Assembly: GCA_004431415.1 (NCBI GenBank)
Contig: QPMI01000209.1
Span: forward strand, 62,001-126,000
DNA: 64,000 bases
Source: Cyanophora paradoxa CCMP329
Lineage: Eukaryota; Plantae; Glaucophyta
Direction: 5' to 3'
A program made the position numbers and the translations under genes. Shown here one piece after another: positions 1 to 22,704 of the stretch. Below the pieces are notes generated by a model that saw nothing but the letters and a program-made list of their open reading frames with translations, did not search any database and was not told the origin of the DNA. How positions within the stretch are numbered: the first letter of the stretch is position 1; every line of letters begins with the position of its first letter.

Positions 1-1583
1 CTGGCAGCACGTGATCCCCCGCCTGACGCGGTCGGACTTCGCGCTCCCGACGCTGGCGCCGCTGCTGCGGGAGATCCAGGAGGGCCTTGTCCACGGCAAG
101 GGCTTCCACCTCGTGCGTTCCCCGCCCGCCCGCCGGCCGCCCCTCTCCTCCCCAGCAGAGCGTTCGCACGCCAGATCCGCGGGCTCCCCGCGCCGCCGGC
201 GACGACGCTGGACTCGGCGCTGGCGTTCTGGGCCATCGGCGCCCACGTCGGCGACGCCGTCCCTCAGAACGCCCAGGGCGCGCCGCCCCGGCCCGGCCGC
301 CTCTCCTCCCGCGCGGCTTCCTGATCATGACCGCTGGGCCTGGCAGGGCACGTGCTGGGGCACGTGAGGGACCTGGGGGCCGACCCCTCGCTCCCCACGA
401 CGCGCATCTACACCACGCGCGAGGCCCAGCGGTGCGGGCCGGGGGCGCCCCCGCCCGCTCCCTCCCGCCTGCACTTGAGTTCGCGACGGGGCGCGCAGGT
501 TCCACACGGACAGCTGCGACATCGTCGGCCTCATGTGCCTCGCCAAGGCGCCGGCCCCTGCTGGTCCAACCCCGCCCGCCGGACCCGAACCCGAACCCGC
601 GCCCCGCAGGCGAAGGAGGGCGGCCTCTCCTCCTGGTGCTCCTCCGTCACGGCGCGCCCGCCCCCTCCCCGCCCCCAGCGCCGGCGCCCGGTCCGACGGT
701 CCTGGGGGAACAGGTGTACAACGAGATGGCGAGGCGCCACCCCGAGCTGGTCGCGGAGCTGACGAGCGAGGCGCTCGTGTGGGACCGCAAGGGCGAGATC
801 CCCGCAGGCAAGGCGCGCCCCGGCGGCCGCACCCCCCTCGCCATCGCAGCCCTCGCCCCCCCCGCTGAACGCGCCCGCGCCCCCGCCGGCGCCCGCGCAG
901 CTGGCGTACTACAGCGGGGCGGTGATGAACTGGACGGGGGAGGGGCAGCTGAGCACCATCTACGACCGCTCCTTCTTCTTCGCCGCCCAGGCGCGCTTGG
1001 CGGCTCCGCCCCCGACGGCGAGCCCGCCCCCGCCCCCGCGCTCACGCCGCCCCGCAGCGCTTCCCGGAGGTCCCCCGCCTCACCGAGCGCCAGGTGCCGG
1101 CCGCCCCGGCAGCGGCGCTGTACCCCCCCCCCGGGGGGGGGGGGCGCGTCTGAGGTGGCGCAGGTGGCGGCGTTCGAGGCGCTGGAGGCGACGTGCGCGC
1201 GGGAGGACGTGAGCCTCCGCTTCGCCCTCGAGCCCGGCGACGTCCAGGCCCGCCCGCCCGCCCCGCCCGCCCCGGCGCCCGCCCCCGCGCCCGCGCCACG
1301 CCCCCGCCCCCTCCTCGCGCCGGCGCCGAGGCCTTTTCGGGCGCAGCTGCTCCACAACCACACGACGCTGCACGCGCGCTCCGCCTTCACCGACCACGCG
1401 CCCCCGCGCGGCAAGCGCCACCTCCTGCGCCTCTGGCTCAGCGCCCCCAACGGGCGGCCCCTCTCGGGCACCGCCTTCTCCGAGCGCTACGGCGGCGACC
1501 TCTCCTCCCCGGGGGCCCTCCGCGGCGGCATCCGCACCCCCGGGCAGGAGCCATACGCCCCGCTCGACGTCGACGCGGGGTAG
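1..1583 (+). CDS. TauD/TfdA-family Fe(II)/2-oxoglutarate-dependent dioxygenase (5'-partial, 9 visible introns)
   Basis: Spliced translation gives GKGFHLIRGLP...QNAQGHVLGHVRDLG...RIYTTREAQRFHTDSCDIVGLMCL (HxD motif), WDRKGEIP, and QLLHNHTTLHARSAFTD...RHLLRLWL (distal His and 2OG-binding Arg). Stop TAG is at 1581-1583. Confidence 0.88.
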
Positions 1584-2543: not shown

Positions 2544-5500
2544 ATGTTTGATGTCAATCCGGACGGGTACAGGAGCCGGCTCGCTGTCATGGCCGCCGAA
2601 GAGGAAACGCGCGGGGAGTTCGAGGAGCTCGACCGCCTCCGCACGATCAAAACTGCGGCGGCCGAGCAGCTGCTCAAGTCCCGCCTGGGCGCCAGCTTTC
2701 GCAGCGGTCTCATCGGGCAAATTGAACTTGATTTCGACGAGGAGGACTGCGTCGTGAGCTTCCACTGCGTGCGCCGCCGTGCACCCCAGCCCGCCGCCGC
2801 CGCAACCTCCGCGTAACGCCCTAACCGCCGGACGGCGTACAGAACTACAAGGAGCTCGGCTTGCAGCCGGGAGTTTTGATCAGGTGCTAACGCGCACGCG
2901 GGGTCGGGGACGTGGACGCTGGGCCGGCATGACTGGTCAAGCTCCGAGCCTTCCTGACCTCTCGTGCCCGCAGTGTCACTGGCTCTCCGAAGTGCCTAGG
3001 CGAGAGCTTTATCCTTTTACAACGCGCGAATAATGCATAGAGGCCGCTCCGAGCTCGAGGCGGGCTGGCCCCAGCCTGGCCGGGGCTCGGGGCTGACGCC
3101 GCCGTCTAACGCCATCCCGTCTCCGCCGCAGGTGCGTGGGACGTCACGAAGAGCATCCCTATCAATGGTGAGCTTGAAAAGCGCCGCGGCGGCGCTCCCG
3201 CCGCCCGCCGCCGCCGCCGCGCGCACACGAGCTCGAGCGGCGGGCCGACACGAGGCGGTGGGCTGAGACGACGTGCCTGCAGAGCACGGCGGGCTATTTA
3301 TCCACATCTCCAAAACGTTGCTTCCCTTCGGTGCGGACGCCGCGGGATTCGCCGCGGCGCCCTGTGAGCTCGACGGCCGCGCAGAGTTCAAGTTCATCAT
3401 CCGCAAGGACGACCGCATCCTCTGTGGGCCCATTCGATCTCACATACACGAAAACATTCGATCCGGCCCGACCCTCCGTGCGCAGGGCAGCGCGGCTCGA
3501 ACTTCGCGATCGGCGCCAAGATGCCGGATCGGTTCCACATTTACGCCGATATGTTCATGGGCGAGGGTACGCCGTACCCGGCCCGCCGCGACGCCCGCGC
3601 GCATGTGCCGGCCCAGACAACGACGGCGCCGGCCGGCAGTGACGGACGCGAAGAAGAAGCCCATCACGTACAACGACTACAGCTGGAACCACTACGCGTG
3701 TGCCCGCCCCCGCTTCGAGTGCCGAGCGGAGGGAGATGCTGACGACCCGGCACCAGATGGGCCCTCACGAACAAGAACTCGTGTCAGGTCACGGTCGAGG
3801 CCGACCACATGTACCCCCTCTGCCTTCCTCCTCCCCCTCCCCCTCCTGCCGCCGAACGGCGTACCCCTGCAGGTACCTGGATCCTTCCTGCCGCATGCGC
3901 CGCCTCCTCGACAAGGTTCTACCCCACGCTCCGTACCCCTCCCCCCCTGCAGCCGACGTGCCCCTCCGTCCCCCAGGCGATGGCCGCGCTCGACAAGGCG
4001 CTCAACGTGCGCGCGTACCCCTCGGGCCGCGCAGCCCCGCCGGCTGCCGGTCTGATCGATGATGCGGGGCGCGGGGGCAGCCGCCGCGGCACAGCGAGGA
4101 GGACCTCGAGCCGCTTCGGGGCCGGCTGCGCGCCCTCGTCGCCCGCATCGACGCCCTCCAGCCGCTCCTGACCTCCCCCGAGGCGAGCGTGGCCCGCGGC
4201 CGCTCGCGCGGGGCCTGACGAGGCGGGGGGCAGGACCTGGGGGCGCTGGAGAGCCTGCAGAGGTACGTGGAGCTCTCCGCGGGGCAGCCGCACGGCGGCG
4301 AGGCCGGCGAGGCAGCCTTCCGCGTCGCCGCCGCCCAGGTCCCGCCCCGCACCCGCCCCGCCCGCCCCTGCCCCAGCGCGGCCGGCGCCGACCGGGGCCC
4401 GCCCGCCCGCAGGCGGCTGCGCTGATCGAGCGCGCCCGCGTCTCCCTCAACGAGGCGCCGGTGGGCCTGCGGGCGGTGCGGGTCGGGTGCGCGGAGGGAG
4501 CGGCCGCCGGCTCGCGGGGCGGCTGGGCGGAGCTGGCGTGGGCGCACGGCCCCGCCGGCGCCCCGCCGGCGTACGTCGTCCTCAAGGACGGCGTCCCCCT
4601 CGCGACGCTGCCGGGCAGCGCGACGGGCTTCAGGGCCGAGGGCCTCGCGGTGGGCGCCACGGCGGCGCTCTCGGTGGCGGCGCGGACGCCGCACGGGCCG
4701 GCGGCCGGCCCCGTGTGCGCCACGCCGGCGGCCGAGGGGCCGCAGCTCAGCGCCGCCCTCGCCGGCCCCACCAGCGCCCTGCTCGCCTGGACGGTCCCGG
4801 CGGTGGCGGCGGGCAGCGGGCCGGTCCTCTCGTACGACGTGGAGGCGAACGGGCAGAAGGTCGGGAGCGTGGAGGCGGGGGCCGGCAAGCCCGGCGACGG
4901 CCCGCTGACGTTCACGGCCGGCGGGCTGCGGCCGGGCTCGACTGTCGTCTTCCGCGTGGTCCCCGTGACCAAGGCGGGGCCCGGCCCGGCCTCGGCCCCC
5001 GTGCCGCTCCACATCGGCGCGGCGCCGCCCGTGCGCGCCGGCGGCTCGGACGCCGCGCTCGGGTTCCGCGCGGTGCGCGTCGGGAGCGCGCCGGGGGCCG
5101 CCGCCGGCGCCGCGAGCGGCTGGGCGGAGCTGGCGTGGAGCCACGGGCCGCACGGCGCCCCGGCTGCCTACGTCGTCCTCAAGGACGGGACGCCCCTGGC
5201 GGCCCTCGGCGGCAGCGCGACGAGCTTCAGGGCCGAGGGCCTCACCGTCGGCGCCCCCGCCGCGCTCGCGCTGGCCGTCGGCTCGCCCCAGGGGCCCCTC
5301 GCCGGCCCCGTCGTCGTCACGCCGGTGGCCTCGGAGGCGCCGCAGCTGACGGCGGCGCTGTCGGGGGCGACGAGCGCGCTGCTGGCGTGGAGCGCGCCGC
5401 AGGGCGCCGCCGCGCCGGCCCTCTCCTACGATGTCGAGAAGGACGGGGAGAAGATCGGCAGCATCGACGCCGCCAAGGCAGGCGAGGGTCCGCTCACCTT

Positions 5501-7744
5501 CGCCGCCGCCGGCCTCGCCCCGGGCGCCACTGCCGTCTTCCGCGTGGTTCCCGTGACCAAGGCGGGGGCCGGCCCCGCCTCCGCCCCCGTGCCCCTCTTT
5601 GTCGGTTCCACCCGCCCCGGCCCCACCTCGAGCTCCGAGGCGCCGGTGGGCCTGCGGGCGGTGCAGGTCGGGTGCGCGGAGGGGGCGGCGGCCGGCTCGC
5701 GGGGCGGCTGGGCGGAGCTGGCGTGGGCGCACGGCCCCGCTGGCGCCCCGCCGTCGTACGTCGTCCTCAAGGACGGCGTCCCCCTCGCGACGCTGCCGGG
5801 CAGCGCGACGGGCTTCAGGGCCGAGGGCCTCGCGGTGGGCGCCACGGCGGCGCTCTCGGTGGCGGCGCGGACGCCGCACGGGCCGGCGGCCGGCCCCGTG
5901 TGCGCCACGCCGGCGGCCGAGGGGCCGCAGCTCAGCGCCGCCCTCGCCGGCCCCACCAGCGCCCTGCCCGCCTGGACGGTCCTGGCGGCGGCGGCGGGCA
6001 GCGGGCCGGTCCTCTCGTACGACGTGGAGGCGAACGGGCAGAAGGTCGGGAGCGTGGAGGCGGGGGCCGGCAAGGCCGGCGAGGGCCCGCTGACGTTCAC
6101 GGCCGGCGGGCTGCGGCCGGGCTCGACTGTCGTCTTCCGCGTGATCCCGGTGACCAAGGCGGGGGCCGGCCCGGCCTCCGCCCCCGTGCCCCTGTACGTC
6201 TCGGCCGCGCTCCAGGCGCCGGCCTCGCCTGCGGCTTCGTCGCTGGCCGTGGCGCCGGCCGACGGGGAGCACGGCTCGCCGGCGCGCCCCACGATGGGCG
6301 CCATCCGCCGCTCCTCCCTCGGCACCTCCGACGGCGAGCTCGCCAGGTGCGGGGTACCCGATTCTAGGCACACCCGGCCGGCGGACCCTGAGCCAAGGCG
6401 CGCGCAGCCCCGAGTCGAGCATGGACCGCGGCAAGGCCCTCGCGATCTCTAACGAGTTCCGCGTCCTCGCCCGCCTGGTACCCCCCACCACTCGCCCCCT
6501 CCACCGACGCCTGCGAAACGCCGTACCCCCCGCAAAGGTGCCGGGGAAGGAGGCGGAGCTGGCGGTGCTGGAGGCGATGCTCTCCAACGCGGACGCCCTC
6601 GCCCGCGCGCCCCGCGCTCCCGCCCCTTTCCCTCCCGCCGGCTCCCGTCTGAGGTGCGGGCAGGCCTGCGGGGGGAGCTGGCGGGCCTGCGGGAGCGCGA
6701 GGCAGCGCTCCTGCGTGACCTCGAGGCCGCCCGCGCCACCGCCGCCGCCGCCAGCGCCGCCGCCGCCGTGCCCCAACGCCCCGCCCCGCCCCCGCCCCGC
6801 CCCGCCGTGCTGAGCCCGGGCCGGCGCGTGCACGCAGGAGCGCTGCCGCGCGCTCGAGGCGGAGCTCGCCGAGCTCTTGGCCCTCCTCGCGGTGCCCGCC
6901 CGCGCGCGCGCCCCTCCCGAATCGGGCCCCGGCCGGATTCGAACCCGCGGGGCGCGCGCAGGCCAAGGAGAATGAGCTCGAGGCGCTGCGGCGGGAGGTC
7001 GAGGGCCTGCGGGTGCGCGCCCGCCGCCGGCCGGCCCTCCCGCTCTGCCCCGGTCCGAGCGCGGGTGCGCCCTCCAGTCGCAGAAGGCGGGCCTGGACGC
7101 GCGCGTCGCGGAGCTCGCGGCCGCCGGCGACGCCGCCAAGGCCGAGGCGCGCCCGCCCCGCAGAGCCGGCCCCGCGCCGCGGCCGCGGCCGCCGCCCTCA
7201 CGCGCCGGGGCAGATCGCGGCGCTGAAGGCGAAGCTGGCGGCCGCGGAGGCCCGCGCCGCCGCCCTCGAGCGCGACCTGAAGGTGCCCGCGCGCGCCCCT
7301 CCCGCATCTCCCACCTCTACCTCCGTTCCGAGCGCCGCGGCAGGCGCGGGAGGGGGAGCTGCTGGAGGTGGCGAGGGAGGTGGCGGCCATCCGGGACGCC
7401 AGCACCGGCATCTCCCGCGACCTCGACGCCGTGCCCCCCCCGCCCCCCTCGCCCGCCTCGCCCGCCTCGCCCGCCCACGCGCGGGGGCGCCAGATGGCCG
7501 ACCGGAAGCTGGACGTCCACGCCCGCGTCTGCATCTGCGGCCGGCAGGCCCCGGGTGGCGGCCCCGGCCAGGCGAGCCCCCCCCGCCGCCCCCGTACCGG
7601 TCCCGGCTGAGAGGCGCCCGCTCACGGCAGCACCGGCAGTCGCCGGGGAGCGTGAACCCGGCGGCGGGCCGGCGGGGCGGCGGCGGCGGCAGCGGCGGCG
7701 GCCACTCCTTTCGCAGCGTCGCCTCAGACGACAGCGCCTTCTGA
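2544..7744 (+). CDS. multidomain protein: CBM20 starch-binding domain + six fibronectin type III-like domains + C-terminal coiled coil
   Basis: Spliced exons at about 2745-3520 read VVSFHCNYKELGLQPGVLISVTGSPKCLGAWDVTKSIPIN...FEFKFIIRKDDRILWQRGSNF, matching the CBM20 pattern (G-S...LG-W, EFKF, W-x-x-G-x-N). The exon at 4412-6346 encodes three units of two FN3-like domains (LAW...YVV...F-A-GL; LAW...SYDVE...GLRPGSTVVFRVVPVT-AG-GPAS). Heptad-rich exons follow at 6400-7520. Stop TGA is at 7742-7744. Confidence 0.72.
4452..6194 (+). repeat. intragenic A-B-A' triplication of a two-FN3 unit; A (4452-5009) and A' (5637-6194) are nearly identical 558-bp copies
   Basis: Both copies start gaggcgccggtgggcctgcgggcggtgc and align colinearly with few substitutions. 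The middle unit (about 5056-5598) is clearly more diverged. Confidence 0.9.
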
Positions 7745-8038
7745 GGGCCCGTGAGGGCCCTTTTCCCGGCCGGACCGCGCACGGGCGCCGTGCCCTTGTT
7801 CTTTACTTTCTGTTCTTTCCTGCACAGAGCCCCCTTCGCTGTTGCGGAGGGGGTCCCATAATTGACTTAGCTTTTAGATGTGTACCTTGCCGCAGGCACG
7901 CAGTGTAGATCTTGAGTAGCCGCAAATTACCGTGTCACAGCTACGATGCTTATTGTAATTTGTAAAGTACACCGCACATTTTCCCCTGACCGTCGGACTC
8001 TAGCCCAGTGTCTGTGTAATTATATAAAAAGCTTGCAA

Positions 8039-8332
8039 TTAATATTTCCAGCTAGGCCGGTACCACGCGCGCGGGGCCGGCCCGCAGCCGCGGCCGGCGA
8101 CTGCCGCTGCTGCTAGCGCTTCGCGCGTGCGCTGCAGCGGCGGCCCCCGACGCCGGCGTTCGGATCCGCATGCGCAAGTCTCCCCTAGCATCGTGTTGAG
8201 CAGCGATGACTTTCCGTCGCCGGTCTTCCCGACGACCGCATGCGCAATGACGACGGCTTGCGGCAGGGGCGCATCGGCACGAACGCTAATCGTGCGTCGA
8301 AGCTGTGCCGCTTGACTCGGAGGGGGCATCAA
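8039..8332 (-). pseudogene. relic of a P-loop GTPase (dynamin-like/SLIP-GC/AIG1-type N-terminus)
   Basis: Reads LPQAVVIA[HA]VVGKTGDGKSSLLNTMLGE, a Walker A GxxxxGKS after a hydrophobic strand. No downstream G3/G4 motifs follow before the AT-rich spacer, and the strand before the P-loop carries an apparent 6-bp palindromic insertion. Confidence 0.55.
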
Positions 8333-8800
8333 TGTCGTTCAACGGTTCAGCTGCAACGTACGCGTTAACTGGGCAGAGTTTAAATGGCGTACCCGAAGCA
8401 GGTGGACGCGCACGAAGCAGACTGTACCCCAGGTCCATTGACTTTGGTTGCCTCAGGGACTCGACTGCGAGTTTTTTTCGTCCTGCTTCTCGTACCGGTA
8501 TCAACGATCAGTGCATTGTTCGCGGTCGCTGTTCATCGCGTCACGCAACTTCGGCGAGCGAGGAGCTACCGGTAGTCGCGTCATTCGAAGTCGCAGCTAG
8601 CCGCGGCGAGCATCCCCCGAAGCCTCGAGCTCCCGGCCGCGAAGTCGCCGTTCGTCCCTCAGCATCCCTCTAGCCGAGCCTCCCGTATTCCCGGTGCGTA
8701 CGTGCGTCAACTCGCGTTTTTCGGACGCGGCCGGGACGCCCGCGTCCGGCTCTCGGCTTGCGCTGAAAAACGTCATCGCTGCAGACAAACACGCGCAACG

Positions 8801-11800
8801 ATGCCGCCGATGGGCCTTGATCTGTCGAAGTTCGCGCTCTGGGACGAGGTTTTCCACCCCCAGGTGCGAGCTACAAGCTCGAGGAGCTCCCAGTCTCGGG
8901 GAAAAGTGCGGTGACGCGGGGCGTCCCCCTCCGAGCAGAGCGGTCCCCGTCGCATCGTCATTCTCTATGGCACGCAGACTGGCACGGTTCGTCGGCTCCC
9001 ACTTCTTTGCATTCGCCGTAACCGAATTTCCCGTTCGCAGAGCGAGGGCTTCGCCAAGGCGGTAGGAGCATTCCCCGCGCTTCGCCGCCGCGACTGCTCA
9101 CGCGTACGCAGGTCTTCGCCTCGGCTTCGGCTCGCAACTACGATGTCAGGATATCGTGCATGGATCGCTACGATTGCTCGAAGCTCGCCGAGGAGGACGT
9201 CATCGTCTGCCTGACTTCCACTTTCTGTGCGTTTTCCGCCGTTACGTTCAGCGGCGCTCGCGCAAGCACCCGTGTGCTTACTCGCGGGCCGCTCGCAGAC
9301 AATGGTGAGTTTCCGGACAACGCGCGTTCGTTCTGGGCCTTCGTCAACAGCGCCGACCGCCCTGCGGACTCCCTCTCGAAGACCTCGTACGCGATGCTCC
9401 AAATTCGATCGCATCGAGGCGCTTATTCTCGGCGACGCAGGTTCGCCGTGTTCGGCCTCGGCAACAAGAAGAACGTGGAGAACTTCAACTCGGCCGGCAA
9501 GATGCTCGACGAGGTGCGCGCCTCGCTATGCGTGCGTACGCAGCCGCACTGATTGCCGCCTTTCTTGCAGAGGTTGGCTGCGCTCGGCTCGAAGCGCCTG
9601 GTTCCCATCGGTTCGCTGCGCTGAAACTCGCTCGCGCTCGTCCGCATCTGATCGCCGGCGCCCAGGCCTCGGCGACGAGTACGACCAGAACGGTCACGAG
9701 TCGGCCTACCGCCCGTGGGTCAAGAGCCTCTGGGCGGCCCTCGGCTCGAGCGAGGCCAAGCGCCACCTCCCGATCACCATGAACTGCGAGCTCTCGAGCG
9801 ACAAGTCGGCCCCCGCCGCGGCCGCCGTCCCCGCCGGCTTCGCCTCCCTCAAAGTCGGTGCGCCCCCGCCGCGCCGCGCCGCGCCGCGCGCGAACGCCCC
9901 TCGGGCCGGCGCCTCACGCCGCCCGCAGTGTCGAACGACCTGCTCTCGGCCACGGGCTACGACCGCGAGGAGCGCATGCTCGTGCTTGACCTCGCCGGCT
10001 CGCCCTTCGCCTCGTACGAGCTCGGGAGCCAGATCCTCGTGCAGCCGCGCAACTCGGCCCAGAAGGTGGCGCGCACCGCGGCGGCCCTCAAGCTCGACCT
10101 GGACGCCGTCGTCAGCGTCTCGGCGGTGGCGGGGCAGCACTCGCAGTCGGAGGAGATGCCGATCGCGGCCTCGCTGACCGTGCGGGACCTCCTCTCCAGC
10201 TACCTCGACGTCTCCAGCGCTGTCTCGCGCACCCTCCTCGAGGGCCTCAGCATCCTCGCCGCCGACAAGAAGGAGGCCGAGGAGATGGAGAAGATCGCCA
10301 CCGACATGCTCCCCGGTGCGCCCCGCTCCCCGTGCCCGCTCGGCGCCAGCCCTCGCCCTGACCGGGCGCCCCGCAGGCAACGAGTACGGCCGCCTGATGA
10401 CGACCGAGTCCTTCTCGCTGGCGGACGTGCTGGAGCGCTGGCGCAGCGTCTCGATCACGCTGAGCGAGCTCGTCTCGAACGTGCCGCGCGTGGGCCCCCG
10501 CCACTACTCGGTCGCGAGCTCGCCGCTGGTCAAGCCCAAGAGCATCGAGATCCTGTACGTGCTGGACACGTGGGCGACGAAGAAGGGCCCGGCCTTCGAG
10601 GGCCTCTGCACGCGCCACATGGCGTCGCTCAAGGCTGGCGACACCGTGCTCGCCAAGATCGCCCGCGGCGGCATCGCCCTGCCCTCGGACCACGGCCTGC
10701 CCCTCGTCGGCGTCGCCCTCGGCTCGGGCATCGGCGTCTTCCGCGGCATCCTCGAGCACCGCGCCTCCCTGCAGGCCAAGGGCAAGAAGGTCGGGTGCGC
10801 GCCCTCGACGAGGCTTCGGCCGGAGCTCCGGGCCCCCTCCACGCCCCTCCCCAGCCGAGCTGACTTGCGCGCAGGCGCGTGACGCTCTTCTACGGGTGCC
10901 GGCACCGGACCAAGGACTACCTCTTCGAGAAGGACTTCCAGGAGTGGGCGAAGAAGGGCCTCGCCGACGTCGTGCCGAGCTTCAGCCACGACCAGGCCGA
11001 GTTCATCCACCCGGGCATGAAGATCGCGGAGAACCCGCACAAGGTCGCCGACACGCTCGACGCCAACGGCGTCTACGTCTACTGCGGCATCGGCGGCTCC
11101 GTCCCGGGCATCGTGCTCGACAGCCTCATCGCGGCCGTCCGCTCCAAGAAGCAGCTCTCCGACTCGCAGGGCGCCGAGCTCCTCGCCAAGATGCGCAAGG
11201 AGAAGCGCATCGTCGAGGAGGCGTACAGCCGCTCCATCGACGCCGAGAACGCGCTCGGCAGCGTGCAGCTGCGCAAGGGCGGCCACGCCGACGCGGCCGA
11301 CGAGTCCAAGCCGATCGCCGAGTCGTGCGGGGACGCCAAGATGTTCTGCTTCCAGTGCGAGCAGACGGCGTTCGGCAAGGGCTGCACCACCGTCGGCATC
11401 TGCGGCAAGACCCCCGAGGTTGCCGCCCTCCAGGACCTCCTCGTCCACCGCGTCCAGGTGCCCCCGCCCGCCCCGCTCGCTCGTGCTTCTGGGCCAACGC
11501 TCACCGCCTCGGTTCCGCCGCCCGGCAGGTCATGAGCTGGTACGCGCACCAGCTGCGCAAGCTCGCGGAGGAGCACAAGAACCTGACGGCGGAGGAGACG
11601 GAGATCCCGGCCGGCAACCGCTACACGCTCATCGGCATGTTCTCCACGCTGACCAACGTCAACTTCTCGGCCCAGCGCATGCTCGAGTACATCGCCGAGT
11701 GCCGCGACTTCACCACCAAGTACGTCGCCATGTACAAGGCCGCCTGCAAGAAGGCCGGCGTCAAGGAGCGCCAGTGCCCCGCCCCCGTTCAGACCGGCGC

Positions 11801-13726
11801 CGAGGCCGACGGCGACATCGAGGTGCGCTTGGCGCCCCGGCGTTGCGCGCGGGCGCAGGCGCGCTCTGAACCGGACGGGCGGGCGCGTGCAGGACGCGAT
11901 GGTGGAGAAGGGCCGCTCGGTGGGCGTGCTCTCGCGCTTCCGCGCCACGAAGAACGACGCCCTCGTCGGCTGCCAGGAGATGCTCGTCTACGGCATCAAG
12001 GGGTCCGCCCGCCCTCGCCCGCCCGCGCCGTCCCCTCTAGAGAGCGTTCGCTGACGCCGCTGGGCAGCGTGTGCGCGTACGCGGACCACGCGGTGATGAA
12101 CAAGCACGAGAGCAACAAGATCTACGAGTTCGTGCACCACGGCCTCTCCTTCCTCCTCGAGAAGGAGTCCAAGGACCTCAACGAGGTCCTCGGCATGCTC
12201 CTCAAGTGCGGCGAGGCCAACCTCGTCACCATGGCGCGTGCTCGACGCCCCTCCCGTCGCCCGAGCGAGCGCCGCTGACGGCCGCTCGCGCAGGCGCTGC
12301 TGGCGCAGGCGAACGGGACGTACGGCGAGCAGACGCCGGCGGTTGTGCCCGTCAAGCCCGTCCCGGGCAAGTGCATCCTCATCTCGGGCCACGAGCTCAC
12401 CGACGTGGAGGCCATCCTCAAGCAGACCGAGGGCACCGGCATCAACGGTCCGCCGCCCCCGCCCCACCCCGCCCCGCCCCGCTCCGCCGCGCCGCTGACG
12501 GGGGCGGGGGCGGCAGTGTACACGCACGGCGAGGTGCTCCCGGCGCACGGCTACCCCAAGCTCAAGGCGTACAAGCACCTCGTCGGCCACTTCGGCCAGG
12601 CCTGGCAGCGCCAGTCCGTCGAGTTCGGCTTCTTCCCGGGCGCCATCGTCATGACCACCAACTGCATCACCGCGCCCCGCGAGGAGTACAAGGACCGCAT
12701 CTTCACCGCCGGCGCCGTCGGCTGGCCCGGCATCCCCCACATCGCCAACCAGGACTTCAGCGCCGCCATCAAGCGGTCCGCCCCCGCCACCGCCGCAGCC
12801 GCAGCCGCCCCGCCGCTGACCGCGCCGCCCCCTCCGCAGCGCCCTCGAGCTCCCGGGCTTCTCTGAGAAGGACACCGAGTGCGCGCGGCCCCGCCTCCGC
12901 CCCCGCCCCGCGCCCGCGCGCTGACGCGGCGGCGCGCGCGCAGCTTCAAGTACCCGTCGATCGCGTCGATGCCGCGGGTCAGCCAGTTCACGACGGGGTT
13001 CGGCTCGAAGCTGGTCATCTCGCTGGCGGACAAGGTGATCGGGGGCATCAAGGCGGGCGCCATCACCCGCTTCTACGTCATCGGCGGCTGCGACGGCTTC
13101 GAGGGCGAGCGCTCCTACTTCACCGGTCCGCCCCTCGAGCCCCCCTTCTGCCCGCTCCCGTCCCGCCCTCTGACGGAGGAGCGCCCGCGGCGCAGACTTC
13201 ACGAAGCAGCTGCCGGAGACGTCGGTGGTGCTGACGGTGGGGTGCGGCAAGTACCGCATCAACCACCTCGACTTCAAGACGATCGGGGACACGGGCATCC
13301 CGCGCCTGCTCGACCTCGGCCAGTGCAACGACTCGTACGCAGCCATCGAGATCGCCCTCGCCCTCGCCGGTCCGCCCCTGGGCCCCTCCCCGCCCCCTCC
13401 CTTCTCCAGCGGCGGCGGCTCACGCACGCGCCTCGTCCCCGGCAGGCGCGCTCAACTGCACGGTGCACGACCTGCCGCTCTCGATCGTGCTCTCGTGGTT
13501 CGAGCAGAAGGCCATCGCCGTGCTCCTCACGCTGCTGCACCTGGGCCTCAAGAACATCCGCGTCGGCCCGAACCTCCCCGCCTTCCTGCGGCCCTCGGTC
13601 GTCGGCGTTCTGTCGGACATGTTCGGCCTCAAGCTCGTCTCCGACCCCACGGCCGACCTCACCGACATCCTGGGCGGCGCCCCCAAGGCCGGCGCCCCCT
13701 GCGTCGTCAACTCCCCGGCCGCGTGA
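8801..13726 (+). CDS. hcp: fusion of a cytochrome P450 reductase-like diflavin reductase (flavodoxin FMN + FAD + NAD(P)H domains) with a full hybrid cluster protein (prismane; hydroxylamine/NO reductase)
   Basis: Flavodoxin motifs: [48 protein letters not shown] motifs: [29 protein letters not shown]...DYLF, YVYCG. HCP motifs: [74 protein letters not shown]. The reductase end and HCP start lie in one exon (about 10875-11457). Confidence 0.93.
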
Positions 13727-20465: not shown

Positions 20466-20738
20466 CGCCAAGCGCGCCGCCGCCACCGCACGCCGGTCCT
20501 AGCGCCGCACGCCGCCCTGCGGTACCAGCGGAACCGCTGCGTCCGCGTTGTCTGGCGCGCTGGGGCTGCTGCGCTCCTGTCGGCCGGCCGCGTGGGGATT
20601 CTTTCAGGCGTACCCCTCTAGTGCGCTGGTAACGCGGCTGGTTGCGGCTCAAGCAACACGCCTGTGCAATACGCGCGCGAGCAAGGTGCTCGTCCAGACA
20701 ACACGGCGCCTCACAAAGGCGCCAGCGGGAGGCGGGGA

Positions 20739-22218
20739 ATGGGGTTCGACACTTTCGCGTGGGCATGGGCCGTCGTGAGCTCGCCGCTCCGCCTCATGGG
20801 CGGAGTCCTGGTGCGCAGCGCCTGCCGCGTCGCGCGGGCCCTCCCGCCACCATCGCCCGCCGCATCATGACCGGTGCCGCCGCGCCGCAGGTCTGCCTTG
20901 TGGCCTTCCTTTACGCGTGGGCTTGGTATGCATTCGTCATCGTCAGCGCCTGCAACATCGTTTGGCCGAACAGCCCGGCATGGGCCGTCTTCCACATCCT
21001 CTTCTTCCACATTAGCTACATCCCCATGGTCATCAGCTACATAAAGACGATCTACGCCAACCCCGGCATCGTGCGCCCGTCTTGCCGGCGCGAGGAGCGG
21101 GGACTGATCCCTGTTGCAGGTAACGCCCGAAATCGTGCGGGAGTGGCAGCGCGCGACGACCGATCTGGGAGAGAGGTGCCGCCCGCTCGCCGGCGTCTCC
21201 TCCCGGCTTCACCGGGGCTGATCAGGGTGGAGCTGCTCAGTTTCGAGCGGAAGCGGGACGGCAACGCGCGCTTCTGCCGGAAGTGCAACAGCCCGAAACC
21301 AGACCGCGCTCACCACTGCAGCATTTGCAACAAATGCGTCCTGAAGATGGACCACCACTGTGCGCCGAGCCCGCCCGCCGTCCCAGCACCGCCCCCGACG
21401 CGCCGCGCGCGACGCGCAGGCCCCTGGGTGTGCAACTGCGTCGGCTTCTACAACCACAAGTACTTCGTGCTCTTCATCCTGTGGACGGAGGCGATGTGCG
21501 TGACGATCATCGTGCTCGCCTTCCCGTCCTTCATGCACGCCATCAACCACGTCGTGCCCGCCCGCCCGCCCGCCCCTCCCGCCCCGCCGCGCCTGCCCGC
21601 CGCCGACCGCGCGCCGCCCAGTCCGACCTGGTCTTCGGCGGCTCCGGCGCCTTCTCCCTCGCCTTCGTCTACTGCCTGGCCCTCGTGTCCGCCCCCTGGC
21701 GCCCCCGCCCCGCCCCCGCCCCCGCCCCGCCCCGGCGCCCGACGCCGCCACCGCCGCGCGCAGCTTCGCGCTGGCGCTGGGCGGCTTCGGCGGCTTCCAC
21801 ATCATGCTGATCCTGAACAACAACACGACCATCGAGATGTACGAGCAGAGGGGCAGCCGCACCATCGACGGCGTGCGCCTGCACGCCCCCCCCCCTCCCC
21901 CCCCCCCCCCCTCCCCCCGCCCGCCACGCCCCGCCCCGCCCCGCCCCTCCCTCGCGCCGGCCGCGGCCGACGCGCCGAGCAGAAGATGGTGTGGAAGTAC
22001 GATTGCGGGCGGCGGCGGAACTGGGAGAGCGTGATGGGCACGCGCCCCCTCTACTGGTTCCTCCCCACCCTCGCCACCGTCGAGGGCGACGGCATGCACT
22101 GGCGCATCCGGTGCGCCCCACCGCGCGTCCACCCCGGGTGCCGCGGCGCCGCTCACCGCTCGGCAGGGACGACATCGACCTGCGAGATCTGCAGGCCGTC
22201 CGCACGACGCAGGTCTGA
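20739..22218 (+). CDS. DHHC-type protein S-palmitoyltransferase (ZDHHC2/15/20-like)
   Basis: Motifs [31 protein letters not shown]|[24 protein letters not shown] and [14 protein letters not shown]...WFLP...GDG, with four hydrophobic helices. Confidence 0.93.
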
Positions 22219-22704
22219 TCATGACCTGGCGCCCGCCTCGGGGCGCGCCGCAGCGGCGGCGGCCCCGCGAGCCACTTCCGACCCCCACCCCTCACCCACC
22301 CCTCCACCCCTCGACCCAGTTTCAGTGCTTGCTAGCTCAAGGATTCTATATCGCATCTTCATTTCCAGACTCTGAGAGCTCGGAATGACTCGGCGATAGA
22401 ACTGCGTGCGCAATCGATTCAAATTGCTAAGCGAATCTGAACTGACGTGCACATTCACTACGCATGCGAACTTATAAAATTATATTAAATATTACGTCTG
22501 CGAGTCGCCCCGTAAGAAGGCCGACATAAAGCGAACGTCTGCGACGCGTACGCGCGCTGCTACTCGCAAAATTCTCATAGTTTACAGTAGGTTACACTGC
22601 CGCAGTGCTCCGAGCCTTGGAGGGCGTGCCACGTCCGCGCGAACGACGCAGCGCTCAAGCGCCCGCTCGCCAGCGCTCGGCGAAGCTGGCGCGAGACTCG
22701 CAGC

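What the first reader, a model, noticed from the sequence alone, without database searches (positions are those of the whole stretch)
8801..13726. Self-sufficient hybrid cluster protein: CPR-like diflavin reductase fused N-terminally to a complete HCP
Seen in sequence: one gene encodes flavodoxin (FMN), FAD-binding and NAD(P)H-binding domains followed by a whole HCP. The junction ([21 protein letters not shown]...[11 protein letters not shown]) is stop-free inside a single exon (about 10875-11457), so the fusion does not depend on a guessed splice. The cubane motif is C-x2-C-x8-C-x5-C, and the hybrid-cluster ligand motifs (SGH, THGE, TNC, GGCDG, GCGK, GQCND, SWFEQK) are all intact. Established knowledge: bacterial HCPs are NO/hydroxylamine reductases fed by separate donors (Hcr in E. 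coli, ferredoxin or rubredoxin elsewhere), and diflavin reductase fusions are known from NOS and P450-BM3. Inference: this is a single-chain NAD(P)H to FAD to FMN to [4Fe-4S] to hybrid cluster enzyme. It is probably cytosolic, as no transit peptide or membrane anchor is visible, and may detoxify NO or hydroxylamine, or produce N2O, in an oxygenic alga. I do not know of this architecture being characterised, but cannot exclude database entries.
Basis: partly seen in the sequence, partly recalled or inferred. Interest (0 to 1): 0.88.

Follow-up and report, generated by a model that had tools for sequence, protein, structure and literature searches.

The report
Reductase-fused hybrid cluster protein gene
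This Cyanophora paradoxa gene really does join an NAD(P)H-using diflavin reductase to a complete hybrid cluster protein in one chain, but the gene model and dozens of relatives in other eukaryotes are already public and the enzyme has simply never been studied at the bench.

Summary
Window 8801-13726 (+) is a 20-exon gene. Its product is identical to the public EukProt model tig00000882_g5263.t1 of Cyanophora paradoxa (1228 aa).

- **Domains:** Flavodoxin_1, FAD_binding_1, NAD_binding_1 and a full Prismane/HCP domain all pass Pfam cut-offs.
- **Junction:** it lies inside one stop-free exon (10875-11457).
- **Cluster ligands:** the class I cubane motif and all seven hybrid-cluster ligands align with D. 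vulgaris HCP.

The architecture is not new. About 75 full-length fused protein clusters exist, from glaucophytes, oomycetes, early-diverging fungi, ichthyosporeans, Chromera, a pelagophyte, a kinetoplastid and many metagenomes. Some are transcripts or intronless ORFs. A 2021 review footnote already notes the Cyanophora fusion, calling the partner "sulfite reductase".

- Trees of the two halves agree, which fits one fusion event.
- No fused copy appeared in the prokaryote genome scan.
- The linker carries a conserved D-x-E-N-x-L helix.
- The residues that bind the NADPH 2'-phosphate in CPR are replaced by S-H-D, so NADH may be the donor.

The function is inferred, not shown: NAD(P)H to FAD to FMN to [4Fe-4S] to hybrid cluster, reducing NO or hydroxylamine. 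No biochemical paper was found. RNA reads could not be obtained. The scan had not noted this before on other DNA.

The parts
8801..13726 (+). Whole coding region of the fused gene. The 20 exons are 8801-8863, 8939-8986, 9041-9061, 9112-9226, 9299-9386, 9441-9513, 9571-9610, 9666-9857, 9929-10315, 10377-10794, 10875-11457, 11529-11822, 11893-12002, 12068-12233, 12294-12447, 12517-12775, 12840-12878, 12944-13125, 13196-13369 and 13446-13726.
   Evidence: P0158 was mapped exactly on the window. Each intron has a unique GT/GC-AG solution. The spliced translation is identical to P0158.
8960..9718 (+). FMN-binding flavodoxin-like domain (res 29-167; exons 2-8). It has the motifs YGTQTGT, TSTFYNGEFP and FGLGN.
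   Evidence: Pfam Flavodoxin_1, 111 bits against a cut-off of 25. The motifs are conserved in at least 90% of 38 fusions.
9851..10615 (+). FAD-binding/connecting domain (res 212-422), including RHYSVAS (R-x-Y-S).
   Evidence: Pfam FAD_binding_1, 125.9 bits against a cut-off of 32.3. R and YS are invariant in alignment A1.
10712..11088 (+). NAD(P)H-binding domain (res 455-553) with GSGIGVFRG. At 10978-10995 it has SFSHDQ where CPR/NOS have the 2'-phosphate Ser-Arg.
   Evidence: Pfam NAD_binding_1, 23.8 bits against a cut-off of 22. Alignment to NOS reductase 9q05. The family alignment shows S-H-D in most members.
10875..11457 (+). Junction exon (exon 11, 583 nt). It holds the end of the NAD(P)H domain, the FAD-stacking Tyr599 (11224-11226), the linker and the first 40 residues of HCP in one stop-free frame.
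   Evidence: A phmmer search with this exon alone matched seven proteins of about 1200 aa across query residues 2-193 in a single stretch.
11227..11340 (+). Interdomain linker (res 600-637). It has a conserved helix with D604-x-E606-N607-x-L609 (11239-11256), then a low-confidence tether (res 612-624).
   Evidence: D, N and L are conserved in 70-90% or more of 38 fusions. In the AF2 model the helix is at model residues 584-596 and pLDDT is below 50 at 593-605 (model numbering is P0158 minus 19).
11341..13657 (+). Complete class I hybrid cluster protein (res 638-1206; exons 11-20).
   Evidence: Pfam Prismane, 463.7 bits, profile positions 1-511 of 513. NCBIfam hydroxylamine reductase equivalogs score 657 and 636 bits against cut-offs of 367 and 361. 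Collinear with PDB 7de4, 8cnr and 1e2u.
11347..11403 (+). [4Fe-4S] cubane motif C640-x2-C643-x8-C652-x5-C658.
   Evidence: Aligns with D. vulgaris HCP Cys3/6/15/21. Invariant in the fusion family.
12390..13504 (+). Span holding the seven hybrid-cluster ligands: H899 (12390-12392), E923 (12531-12533), C967 (12663-12665), C1066 (13089-13091), C1094 (13243-13245), C1121 (13324-13326) and E1155 (13502-13504).
   Evidence: Counted against 1e2u numbering H244, E268, C312, C406, C434, C459 and E494 in the alignment. Coordinates. All seven are invariant or at least 90% conserved.

Best explanation
The locus is one nuclear gene of the glaucophyte alga Cyanophora paradoxa. It encodes a protein of about 135 kDa. 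A CPR/NOS-type diflavin reductase (FMN domain, FAD domain, NAD(P)H domain) is joined by a linker of about 38 residues to the exact N-terminus of a complete class I hybrid cluster protein.

The most likely mechanism runs in four steps:
1. NADH or NADPH gives a hydride to FAD.
2. Electrons pass one at a time through FMN.
3. The mobile FMN domain delivers them to the N-terminal [4Fe-4S] cubane of the HCP part.
4. From there they reach the [4Fe-2S-2O] hybrid cluster, which reduces NO to N2O and/or hydroxylamine to ammonium.

The fused reductase thus replaces the separate partner that bacterial HCPs need (Hcr, ferredoxin).

**Shown here:** gene structure, domain content, intact ligands, family-wide conservation, and one clade for each half.

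**Inferred:** electron path, substrate, coenzyme, cytosolic location, and a role in hypoxia or nitrite stress.
For: - **Single stop-free junction exon.**
- **Domains.** All four Pfam domains pass their cut-offs. The HCP half passes two NCBIfam equivalog cut-offs.
- **Ligands.** Four cubane Cys and seven hybrid-cluster ligands align with D. vulgaris HCP.
- **Reductase features.** The FMN, FAD and NAD(P)H motifs are conserved. An acidic residue plus an aromatic (E-A-Y599) aligns with the D-V-W of the NOS reductase 9q05.
- **Gene model.** The model is collinear with 61 fused homologues; the only indel is a 4-residue insertion in the linker.
- **Fused ORFs elsewhere.** They occur in transcriptomes (Cyanoptyche MMETSP1086, Papus, 'Hpha') and as intronless ORFs on metagenome contigs L001 and L002.
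- **Trees.** Trees of the HCP half and of the reductase half recover the same subclades. The fused rows fall in one 100% SH-aLRT clade in each tree.
- **Fold.** The AF2 model has mean pLDDT 86.8 and pTM 0.72, with well-folded domains and a flexible tether only at residues 612-624.
- **Cellular context.** PMC8003979 (Table 4) lists Cyanophora as having PFL activase, PFO, HydA and HydEFG as well. This is a fermentative, anaerobic enzyme set in which an HCP fits.
Against:
- No activity data exist for any member of the family in the papers I could search.
- Docking of the FMN domain on HCP could not be tested. Complex prediction did not fold the pair.
- The CPR residues that bind the NADPH 2'-phosphate are missing, so the coenzyme is unsettled.
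- The Met just before CFQC is invariant. This leaves room for internal initiation that would yield a free HCP.
- The physiological substrate of HCPs is debated even in bacteria (my own knowledge).
Confidence: 0.75

Rival explanations
1. The fusion is real, but its physiological job is not NO or hydroxylamine reduction. The NAD(P)H-fed hybrid cluster would serve another reaction proposed for HCPs, such as peroxide reduction in oxidative stress or protein S-nitrosylation, or it would act on a substrate not yet known.
For: Protist papers list HCP as an H2O2-to-H2O enzyme (PMC3916229, Table 3). Nothing in the sequence tells the substrates apart. The active-site residues are simply those of all HCPs.
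Against: The HCP half passes the curated 'hydroxylamine reductase' equivalog models. A recent paper states that bacterial HCP homologues are thought to convert NO to N2O anaerobically (PMC13632651).
Confidence: 0.15
2. The long ORF exists in the DNA, but the cell mostly makes two proteins. An internal promoter, or initiation at the conserved Met638, would give a free HCP, and the reductase would act separately or in trans.
For: Met638 directly before CFQC is invariant in 30 of 30 fusions. Stand-alone HCPs are nested inside the fused clade. One metagenome contig carries a fused copy next to an unfused copy that is 99.6% identical.
Against: The junction lies in one exon with no stop. The linker has a conserved motif, which would be pointless between separate proteins. 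Assembled transcripts of relatives carry the whole ORF. The two halves have co-diverged.
Confidence: 0.07
3. The gene model is an annotation or assembly artefact that merges two neighbouring genes.
For: The public model and the window come from the same assembly, so their identity is not independent evidence.
Against: No splice is needed at the junction. 61 homologues from independent genomes, transcriptomes and metagenomes show the same collinear architecture. L001 and L002 are single intronless ORFs.
Confidence: 0.02

Closest known systems
E. coli Hcp-Hcr (hybrid cluster protein plus its NADH oxidoreductase)
   Same: A pyridine nucleotide feeds a flavin, then an Fe-S centre, then the hybrid cluster. 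The HCP half aligns over its full length with E. coli HCP 7de4 (E = 1.8e-136).
   Different: - Hcr is a separate FNR-like FAD/[2Fe-2S] protein (title cited in PMC1484493 and PMC13632651). Here the donor is a fused FMN+FAD diflavin reductase with no Fe-S centre of its own.
- E. coli HCP is class II (C-x2-C-x11-C-x6-C in the alignment). The window protein is class I.
Desulfovibrio vulgaris class I HCP (PDB 1e2u/1w9m)
   Same: It has the same N-terminal MFCFQC…C…C cubane motif, the same seven hybrid-cluster ligands and the same length.
   Different: It is a stand-alone bacterial protein of 553 aa. The Cyanophora protein has 637 extra N-terminal residues.
Fused reductase-HCP proteins already in databases (Cyanoptyche, Achlya OQR93068.1, Aphanomyces, Saprolegnia, Basidiobolus, Gonapodya, Sphaeroforma, Creolimax, Chromera Cvel_13627, Chrysophaeum, Papus)
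   Same: The architecture is identical, with 39-56% identity over the whole length. They share the linker motif and fall in the same clade for both halves.
   Different: None in kind. The window gene is the Cyanophora member (EukProt EP00741_P005427). Some relatives add presequence-like or Dpy-30 N-termini.
Self-sufficient diflavin-reductase fusions: NOS, P450 BM3, PNO and CysJ-fused [FeFe]-hydrogenases of protists
   Same: A CPR/CysJ-like NAD(P)H module is fused to a redox enzyme. The reductase half aligns over its full length with the syNOS and BM3 reductase domains. Protist hydrogenase-CysJ and PNO fusions are described in PMC4989108.
   Different: In those proteins the reductase is C-terminal to the catalytic part. 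Here it is N-terminal and the acceptor is an HCP cubane. The nearest unfused reductases are only 24-28% identical.
Chlamydomonas HCP1-4
   Same: These are algal HCPs linked to anoxia and nitrate (PMC8003979, PMC4773151).
   Different: They are stand-alone and organelle-targeted, and thought to be fed by ferredoxin. Chlorophycean HCPs fall outside the fused clade in the tree.

Membership tests
Hybrid cluster protein (Pfam PF03063 Prismane; NCBIfam TIGR01703/NF003658) | Full-length match above the curated family cut-offs | tested here: met
   Prismane scores 463.7 bits against a cut-off of 27, covering profile positions 1-511 of 513. NF003658 scores 657 against 367, and TIGR01703 scores 636 against 361.
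Hybrid cluster protein (Pfam PF03063 Prismane; NCBIfam TIGR01703/NF003658) | N-terminal four-Cys motif for the cubane (class I: C-x2-C-x8-C-x5-C) | tested here: met
   C640, C643, C652 and C658 align with D. vulgaris Cys3/6/15/21.
Hybrid cluster protein (Pfam PF03063 Prismane; NCBIfam TIGR01703/NF003658) | Seven hybrid-cluster ligands (D. vulgaris H244, E268, C312, C406, C434, C459, E494) | tested here: met
   H899, E923, C967, C1066, C1094, C1121 and E1155 were counted in the alignment. They are conserved in 62 fusions. The list of ligands itself comes from my knowledge of the D. vulgaris structures.
Hybrid cluster protein (Pfam PF03063 Prismane; NCBIfam TIGR01703/NF003658) | Binds the two Fe-S clusters and reduces NO or NH2OH | not testable with these tools
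   This needs anaerobic purification, EPR and activity assays.
Diflavin reductase (CPR / NOS-reductase / BM3 / CysJ superfamily) | Flavodoxin_1 + FAD_binding_1 + NAD_binding_1 in that order | tested here: met
   All three pass the Pfam cut-offs on P0158. Residues 24-613 align with the reductase domain of 9q05.
Diflavin reductase (CPR / NOS-reductase / BM3 / CysJ superfamily) | FMN and FAD motifs and a C-terminal acid-x-aromatic that caps the FAD | tested here: met
   QTGT, GLGN and R-x-Y-S are present. E597-A-Y599 aligns with the D-V-W of 9q05.
Diflavin reductase (CPR / NOS-reductase / BM3 / CysJ superfamily) | NADPH 2'-phosphate site (Ser-Arg…Lys…Tyr of CPR/NOS) | tested here: not met
   [12 protein letters not shown] stands opposite FSRLTAQKVYV of 9q05. 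S-H-D is found in most family members. The coenzyme may therefore be NADH. The role of these residues is from my own knowledge.
CysJ (assimilatory sulfite reductase flavoprotein), the label used in PMC8003979 | Score above the curated equivalog cut-off | tested here: not met
   TIGR01931 scores 203.9 bits against a cut-off of 668, and NF008197 scores 118.5 against 838. PDB CysJ matches at 4e-27, against 3e-65 for the NOS reductase. The half is CysJ-like in fold but is not a CysJ orthologue.
Microsomal NADPH-cytochrome P450 reductase | Orthology to CPR and an N-terminal membrane anchor | tested here: not met
   The best unfused CPRs are 24-28% identical. The fused reductases form their own 100% clade apart from the CPRs sampled. 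The N-terminus is 25 acidic residues with no hydrophobic stretch.
Hcp-Hcr two-component system | A separate FNR-like FAD/[2Fe-2S] partner (Hcr) | tested here: not met
   The donor is a fused FMN/FAD reductase with no Fe-S motif of its own. It works like Hcp-Hcr but is not a member.

The most novel reading that the evidence does not exclude
The fused proteins are a eukaryote-only enzyme family that arose once. One CPR-like reductase captured one bacterial-type class I HCP, and the family has since spread patchily across at least five eukaryotic supergroups, by gene transfer between eukaryotes or by massive loss. The family would work as a self-sufficient, possibly NADH-specific, NO/hydroxylamine reductase whose conserved linker helix controls FMN-to-cubane electron transfer. 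That would make it the simplest system in which to settle what HCPs do in eukaryotes.
Probability: 0.45. Interest if true: 0.55.

Novelty: already known. Interest (0 to 1): 0.35.

Why it matters
HCPs are widespread, but their physiological role is still argued over, and in eukaryotes their electron donors are unknown. A natural single-chain enzyme carrying its own NAD(P)H reductase would be a convenient subject for biochemistry, because no partner protein has to be found. It also bears on algal and protist NO and N2O metabolism under hypoxia.

For the scan itself the result is sobering. The gene, its fusion and its many relatives are already in public databases, and the fusion is mentioned in one review. 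The value lies in the comparative details gathered here (single origin, linker motif, altered coenzyme site, absence from prokaryotes), not in a discovery.

Tried and rejected
- **Docking.** Complex prediction (FMN domain against the HCP half, with FMN and 4Fe-4S) was counted but not folded, for a policy reason unrelated to the biology. There is no verdict.
- **ESM Atlas.** The search returned only generic CPR and MTRR clusters at 0.78, which is uninformative.
- **Fused or adjacent copies in prokaryotes.** Its best 80 loci held stand-alone diflavin reductases at 28% identity or less over their full-length matches, and stand-alone HCPs. No bacterial or archaeal locus had both halves within the flanks. 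Two apparent junction-spanning hits were false:
  - L004 is a 604-aa stand-alone reductase.
  - L069 is a bacterial HCP preceded by a 4Fe-4S ferredoxin-domain ORF.
- **'Sulfite reductase' label.** The label from the review was tested and rejected as membership.
- **tRNA calls.** The ARAGORN calls at 1100-1193 and 9732-9826 are over-long. One lies antisense inside exon 8. I take them for false positives.
- **Neighbouring genes.** An fn3-domain ORF lies at 4059-6449, a DHHC palmitoyltransferase at about 20.6-22.4 kb and a TauD-like piece at 87-1580. None has a functional link to the HCP gene.
- **Joined exons.** Full-length searches used the stored public protein P0158. The spliced CDS was only compared with P0158 inside a script.


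Full report
**What is in the window.** The region is GC-rich eukaryotic DNA (65-70% GC here). ORF listing and direct reading show coding pieces on the + strand separated by short introns. Pfam on the separate ORF pieces gave Flavodoxin_1, FAD_binding_1 (two pieces) and Prismane (six pieces) in that order.

The piece at 10876-11457 reads through from the end of a CPR-like NAD(P)H domain (…[11 protein letters not shown]), over a linker, into [36 protein letters not shown] without a stop. Its borders are an AG acceptor at 10873-10874 and a GT donor at 11458-11459.

**Identity of the gene and the organism.** A search started from a relative returned P0158, a 1228-aa EukProt protein named tig00000882_g5263.t1. 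Its accession is EP00741_Cyanophora_paradoxa_P005427. All of P0158 maps exactly onto the window as 20 exons from 8801 to 13723. Each of the 19 introns (50-80 nt) has one unique solution, 18 GT-AG and one GC-AG. The spliced translation equals P0158 (this was a comparison inside a script).

So the window is Cyanophora paradoxa, and the fused gene model is already public. Exon references and the stored protein P0158 were used instead.

**Domain and residue checks.**
- On P0158, Flavodoxin_1 (29-167), FAD_binding_1 (212-422), NAD_binding_1 (455-553) and Prismane (638-1206, profile 1-511 of 513) all pass Pfam's cut-offs.
- The HCP half passes two curated NCBIfam 'hydroxylamine reductase' equivalog cut-offs. 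The reductase half falls far below the CysJ equivalog cut-offs.
- Against solved structures, the HCP half is collinear from its first Met with E. coli HCP 7de4 (1.8e-136), a methanogen HCP 8cnr and D. vulgaris HCP 1e2u.
- Counting along the 1e2u alignment, Cys3/6/15/21 and H244, E268, C312, C406, C434, C459 and E494 correspond to C640/643/652/658 and H899, E923, C967, C1066, C1094, C1121 and E1155.
- The spacing C-x2-C-x8-C-x5-C is that of class I. E. coli shows the longer class II spacing in the same alignment.
- The reductase half aligns over residues 24-613 with the reductase domain of a cyanobacterial NOS (9q05, 3e-65), and then with CPRs and P450 BM3. CysJ is weaker at 4e-27.
- The terminal E-A-Y599-S aligns with the D-V-W-G of that NOS reductase (9q05). 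From my own knowledge of CPR, this acid plus aromatic caps the FAD.
- One feature is not met. Where CPR/NOS have the Ser-Arg…Lys…Tyr that holds the NADPH 2'-phosphate (my own knowledge), this protein has S-H-D…F…H. S-H-D is the rule in the whole family. The coenzyme may therefore be NADH. I mark this as an inference.

**Is the fusion real beyond this assembly?** A phmmer search with the junction exon alone against 1.84 billion representatives found seven proteins of 1186-1235 aa that match query residues 2-193 in a single stretch. Among them are a Cyanoptyche gloeocystis transcript (MMETSP1086), Achlya hypogyna OQR93068.1, Chromera velia Cvel_13627 and a Trinity transcript labelled 'Hpha'. All carry Flavodoxin_1 + FAD_binding_1 + Prismane.

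A full-length search found about 75 clusters with 98-100% coverage, from:
- Basidiobolus, Gonapodya, Hyaloraphidium, Polychytrium, Podochytrium and Siphonaria (fungi);
- Sphaeroforma and Creolimax (ichthyosporeans);
- Aphanomyces, Saprolegnia, Thraustotheca and Achlya (oomycetes);
- Chromera, Chrysophaeum and Papus ankaliazontas;
- many metagenome and metatranscriptome contigs.

Most are named 'hydroxylamine reductase' or 'hybrid cluster protein'. Two metagenome contigs carry the fusion as one intronless ORF. Against 61 of these homologues the Cyanophora model has no indel of 4 or more residues except a 4-residue insertion in the linker. Every splice in the model is therefore backed by homology. 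Only exon 1 (21 residues) has no counterpart.

**Evolution.** In a quick ML tree of the HCP half (81 rows), all 43 fused rows lie in one clade with 100% SH-aLRT. That clade also holds 11 shorter proteins. The clade is sister to bacterial HCPs (Planctomycetota, Verrucomicrobiota, Armatimonadota, Chloroflexota). Chlorophycean HCPs lie outside it.

Of the 11 shorter proteins, most sit on contigs of about 2 kb. One Aphanomyces entry is identical to the fused gene's HCP part. At least some appear to be truly unfused.

A tree of the reductase half puts the 42 fused rows in one 100% clade, apart from the CPR, BM3-like, NDOR1 and SiR-alpha-like sequences sampled. It recovers the same internal groups as the HCP tree: the glaucophyte trio, the Monoblepharidomycetes, Basidiobolus, and ichthyosporeans plus chytrids next to oomycetes. 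It also recovers a second large, mostly environmental subclade with Chrysophaeum, Papus and 'Hpha', with Chromera branching next to it. Congruent halves argue for one fusion event followed by co-divergence.

The nearest unfused reductases are only 24-28% identical. A scan of one genome per prokaryotic species found stand-alone diflavin reductases at 28% identity or less over their full-length matches, and ordinary HCPs, but no locus with both. Two seeming junction hits were false. These are quick LG+G4 trees; I did not run AU tests.

**Linker, fold and targeting.** Right after the FAD-capping aromatic, the family shares D-x-(E/D)-N-x-L (D604, E606, N607, L609 in Cyanophora). A variable stretch follows, then (P/T)-(I/L)-A and an invariant Met before C-x-Q-C.

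An AlphaFold2 model of residues 20-1215, built with the 62-sequence alignment, has mean pLDDT 86.8 and pTM 0.72. The conserved linker motif forms a helix, and only residues 612-624 fall below pLDDT 50. The docking test was not run by the tool.

The reductase's C-terminus sits at the FAD (my knowledge of CPR structures), and the HCP cubane sits at the HCP N-terminus. A tether of about 38 residues would therefore keep the cubane near the FAD/FMN interface. This is an inference.

Cyanophora's N-terminus ([21 protein letters not shown]…) is short and acidic. Many members of the second subclade start with MMRRT or MLRR, which looks like a mitochondrial presequence. Cyanoptyche has two Dpy-30 motifs. 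Cytosolic location for Cyanophora is the default reading and is not shown.

**Literature.** Ten full-text searches found no paper that characterises such a fusion.
[quoted passage not shown] The same table credits Cyanophora with PFL activase, PFO, HydA and HydEFG.
- PMC4989108 describes analogous protist fusions: CysJ-fused [FeFe]-hydrogenases and PNO.
- PMC13632651 states that bacterial HCPs are thought to convert NO to N2O, and it shows an anoxia-induced mitochondrial HCP in Acanthamoeba.
- Subscription papers (van Lis et al. 2020; Hagen 2022) could not be read.

**Verdict.** I give about 0.95 that a single fused polypeptide is encoded, and about 0.75 for the whole self-sufficient reductase mechanism. 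The architecture is already known at the database level and has been mentioned for this very species, while remaining biochemically unstudied. Interest is moderate to low.

Noticed in passing
L001:2611-8727: On a metagenome scaffold, an intronless fused reductase-HCP gene (2611-6333) is followed by a stand-alone HCP (6841-8727). The last 1750 nt of the stand-alone copy are 99.6% identical to the fused gene's HCP half. It has its own presequence-like N-terminus (MRPSVKLANRMTLQAVRLG…). Fused and unfused copies coexist, apparently through recent duplication or gene conversion.
   Followed up: partly
P0151 residues 1-126 (Cyanoptyche gloeocystis transcript): The Cyanoptyche orthologue carries an N-terminal extension with a Dpy-30 motif matched twice, ahead of the flavodoxin domain. 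Either it is a docking or dimerisation module on a redox enzyme, or the transcript assembly is chimeric.
   Followed up: no
window 10978-10995 and family alignment A1: The family-wide S-H-D replaces the Ser-Arg that binds the NADPH 2'-phosphate in CPR/NOS. This hints at NADH specificity in the whole family.
   Followed up: partly
window 11341-11343 (Met638): The Met directly before CFQC, which is the initiator in stand-alone HCPs, is invariant in 30 of 30 fused proteins even though it is internal. It may have a structural role, or it may allow internal initiation.
   Followed up: no
window 12234-12293: Intron 14 of the gene is GC-AG. The other 18 introns are GT-AG. Here the share is 1 in 19.
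   Followed up: partly
window 1100-1193 (+) and 9732-9826 (-): ARAGORN calls two over-long tRNA-like structures (94-95 nt; Arg-CCG and Ala-CGC). The second lies antisense inside exon 8 of the HCP gene. They are probably false positives in GC-rich DNA.
   Followed up: no
window 4059-6449 (+), 20642-22372 (+), 87-1580 (+): The neighbouring long ORFs carry an fn3 domain, a DHHC palmitoyltransferase domain and a TauD-like piece. The very GC-rich stretch at 4-8 kb (up to 82% GC) has long overlapping ORFs on both strands, most of them likely spurious.
   Followed up: no
L069:187-2724: On a contig binned as Dependentiae, a bacterial HCP gene is preceded in the same frame, after one stop, by an ORF with two 4Fe-4S ferredoxin motifs. 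This would be a different, unfused candidate electron donor.
   Followed up: partly
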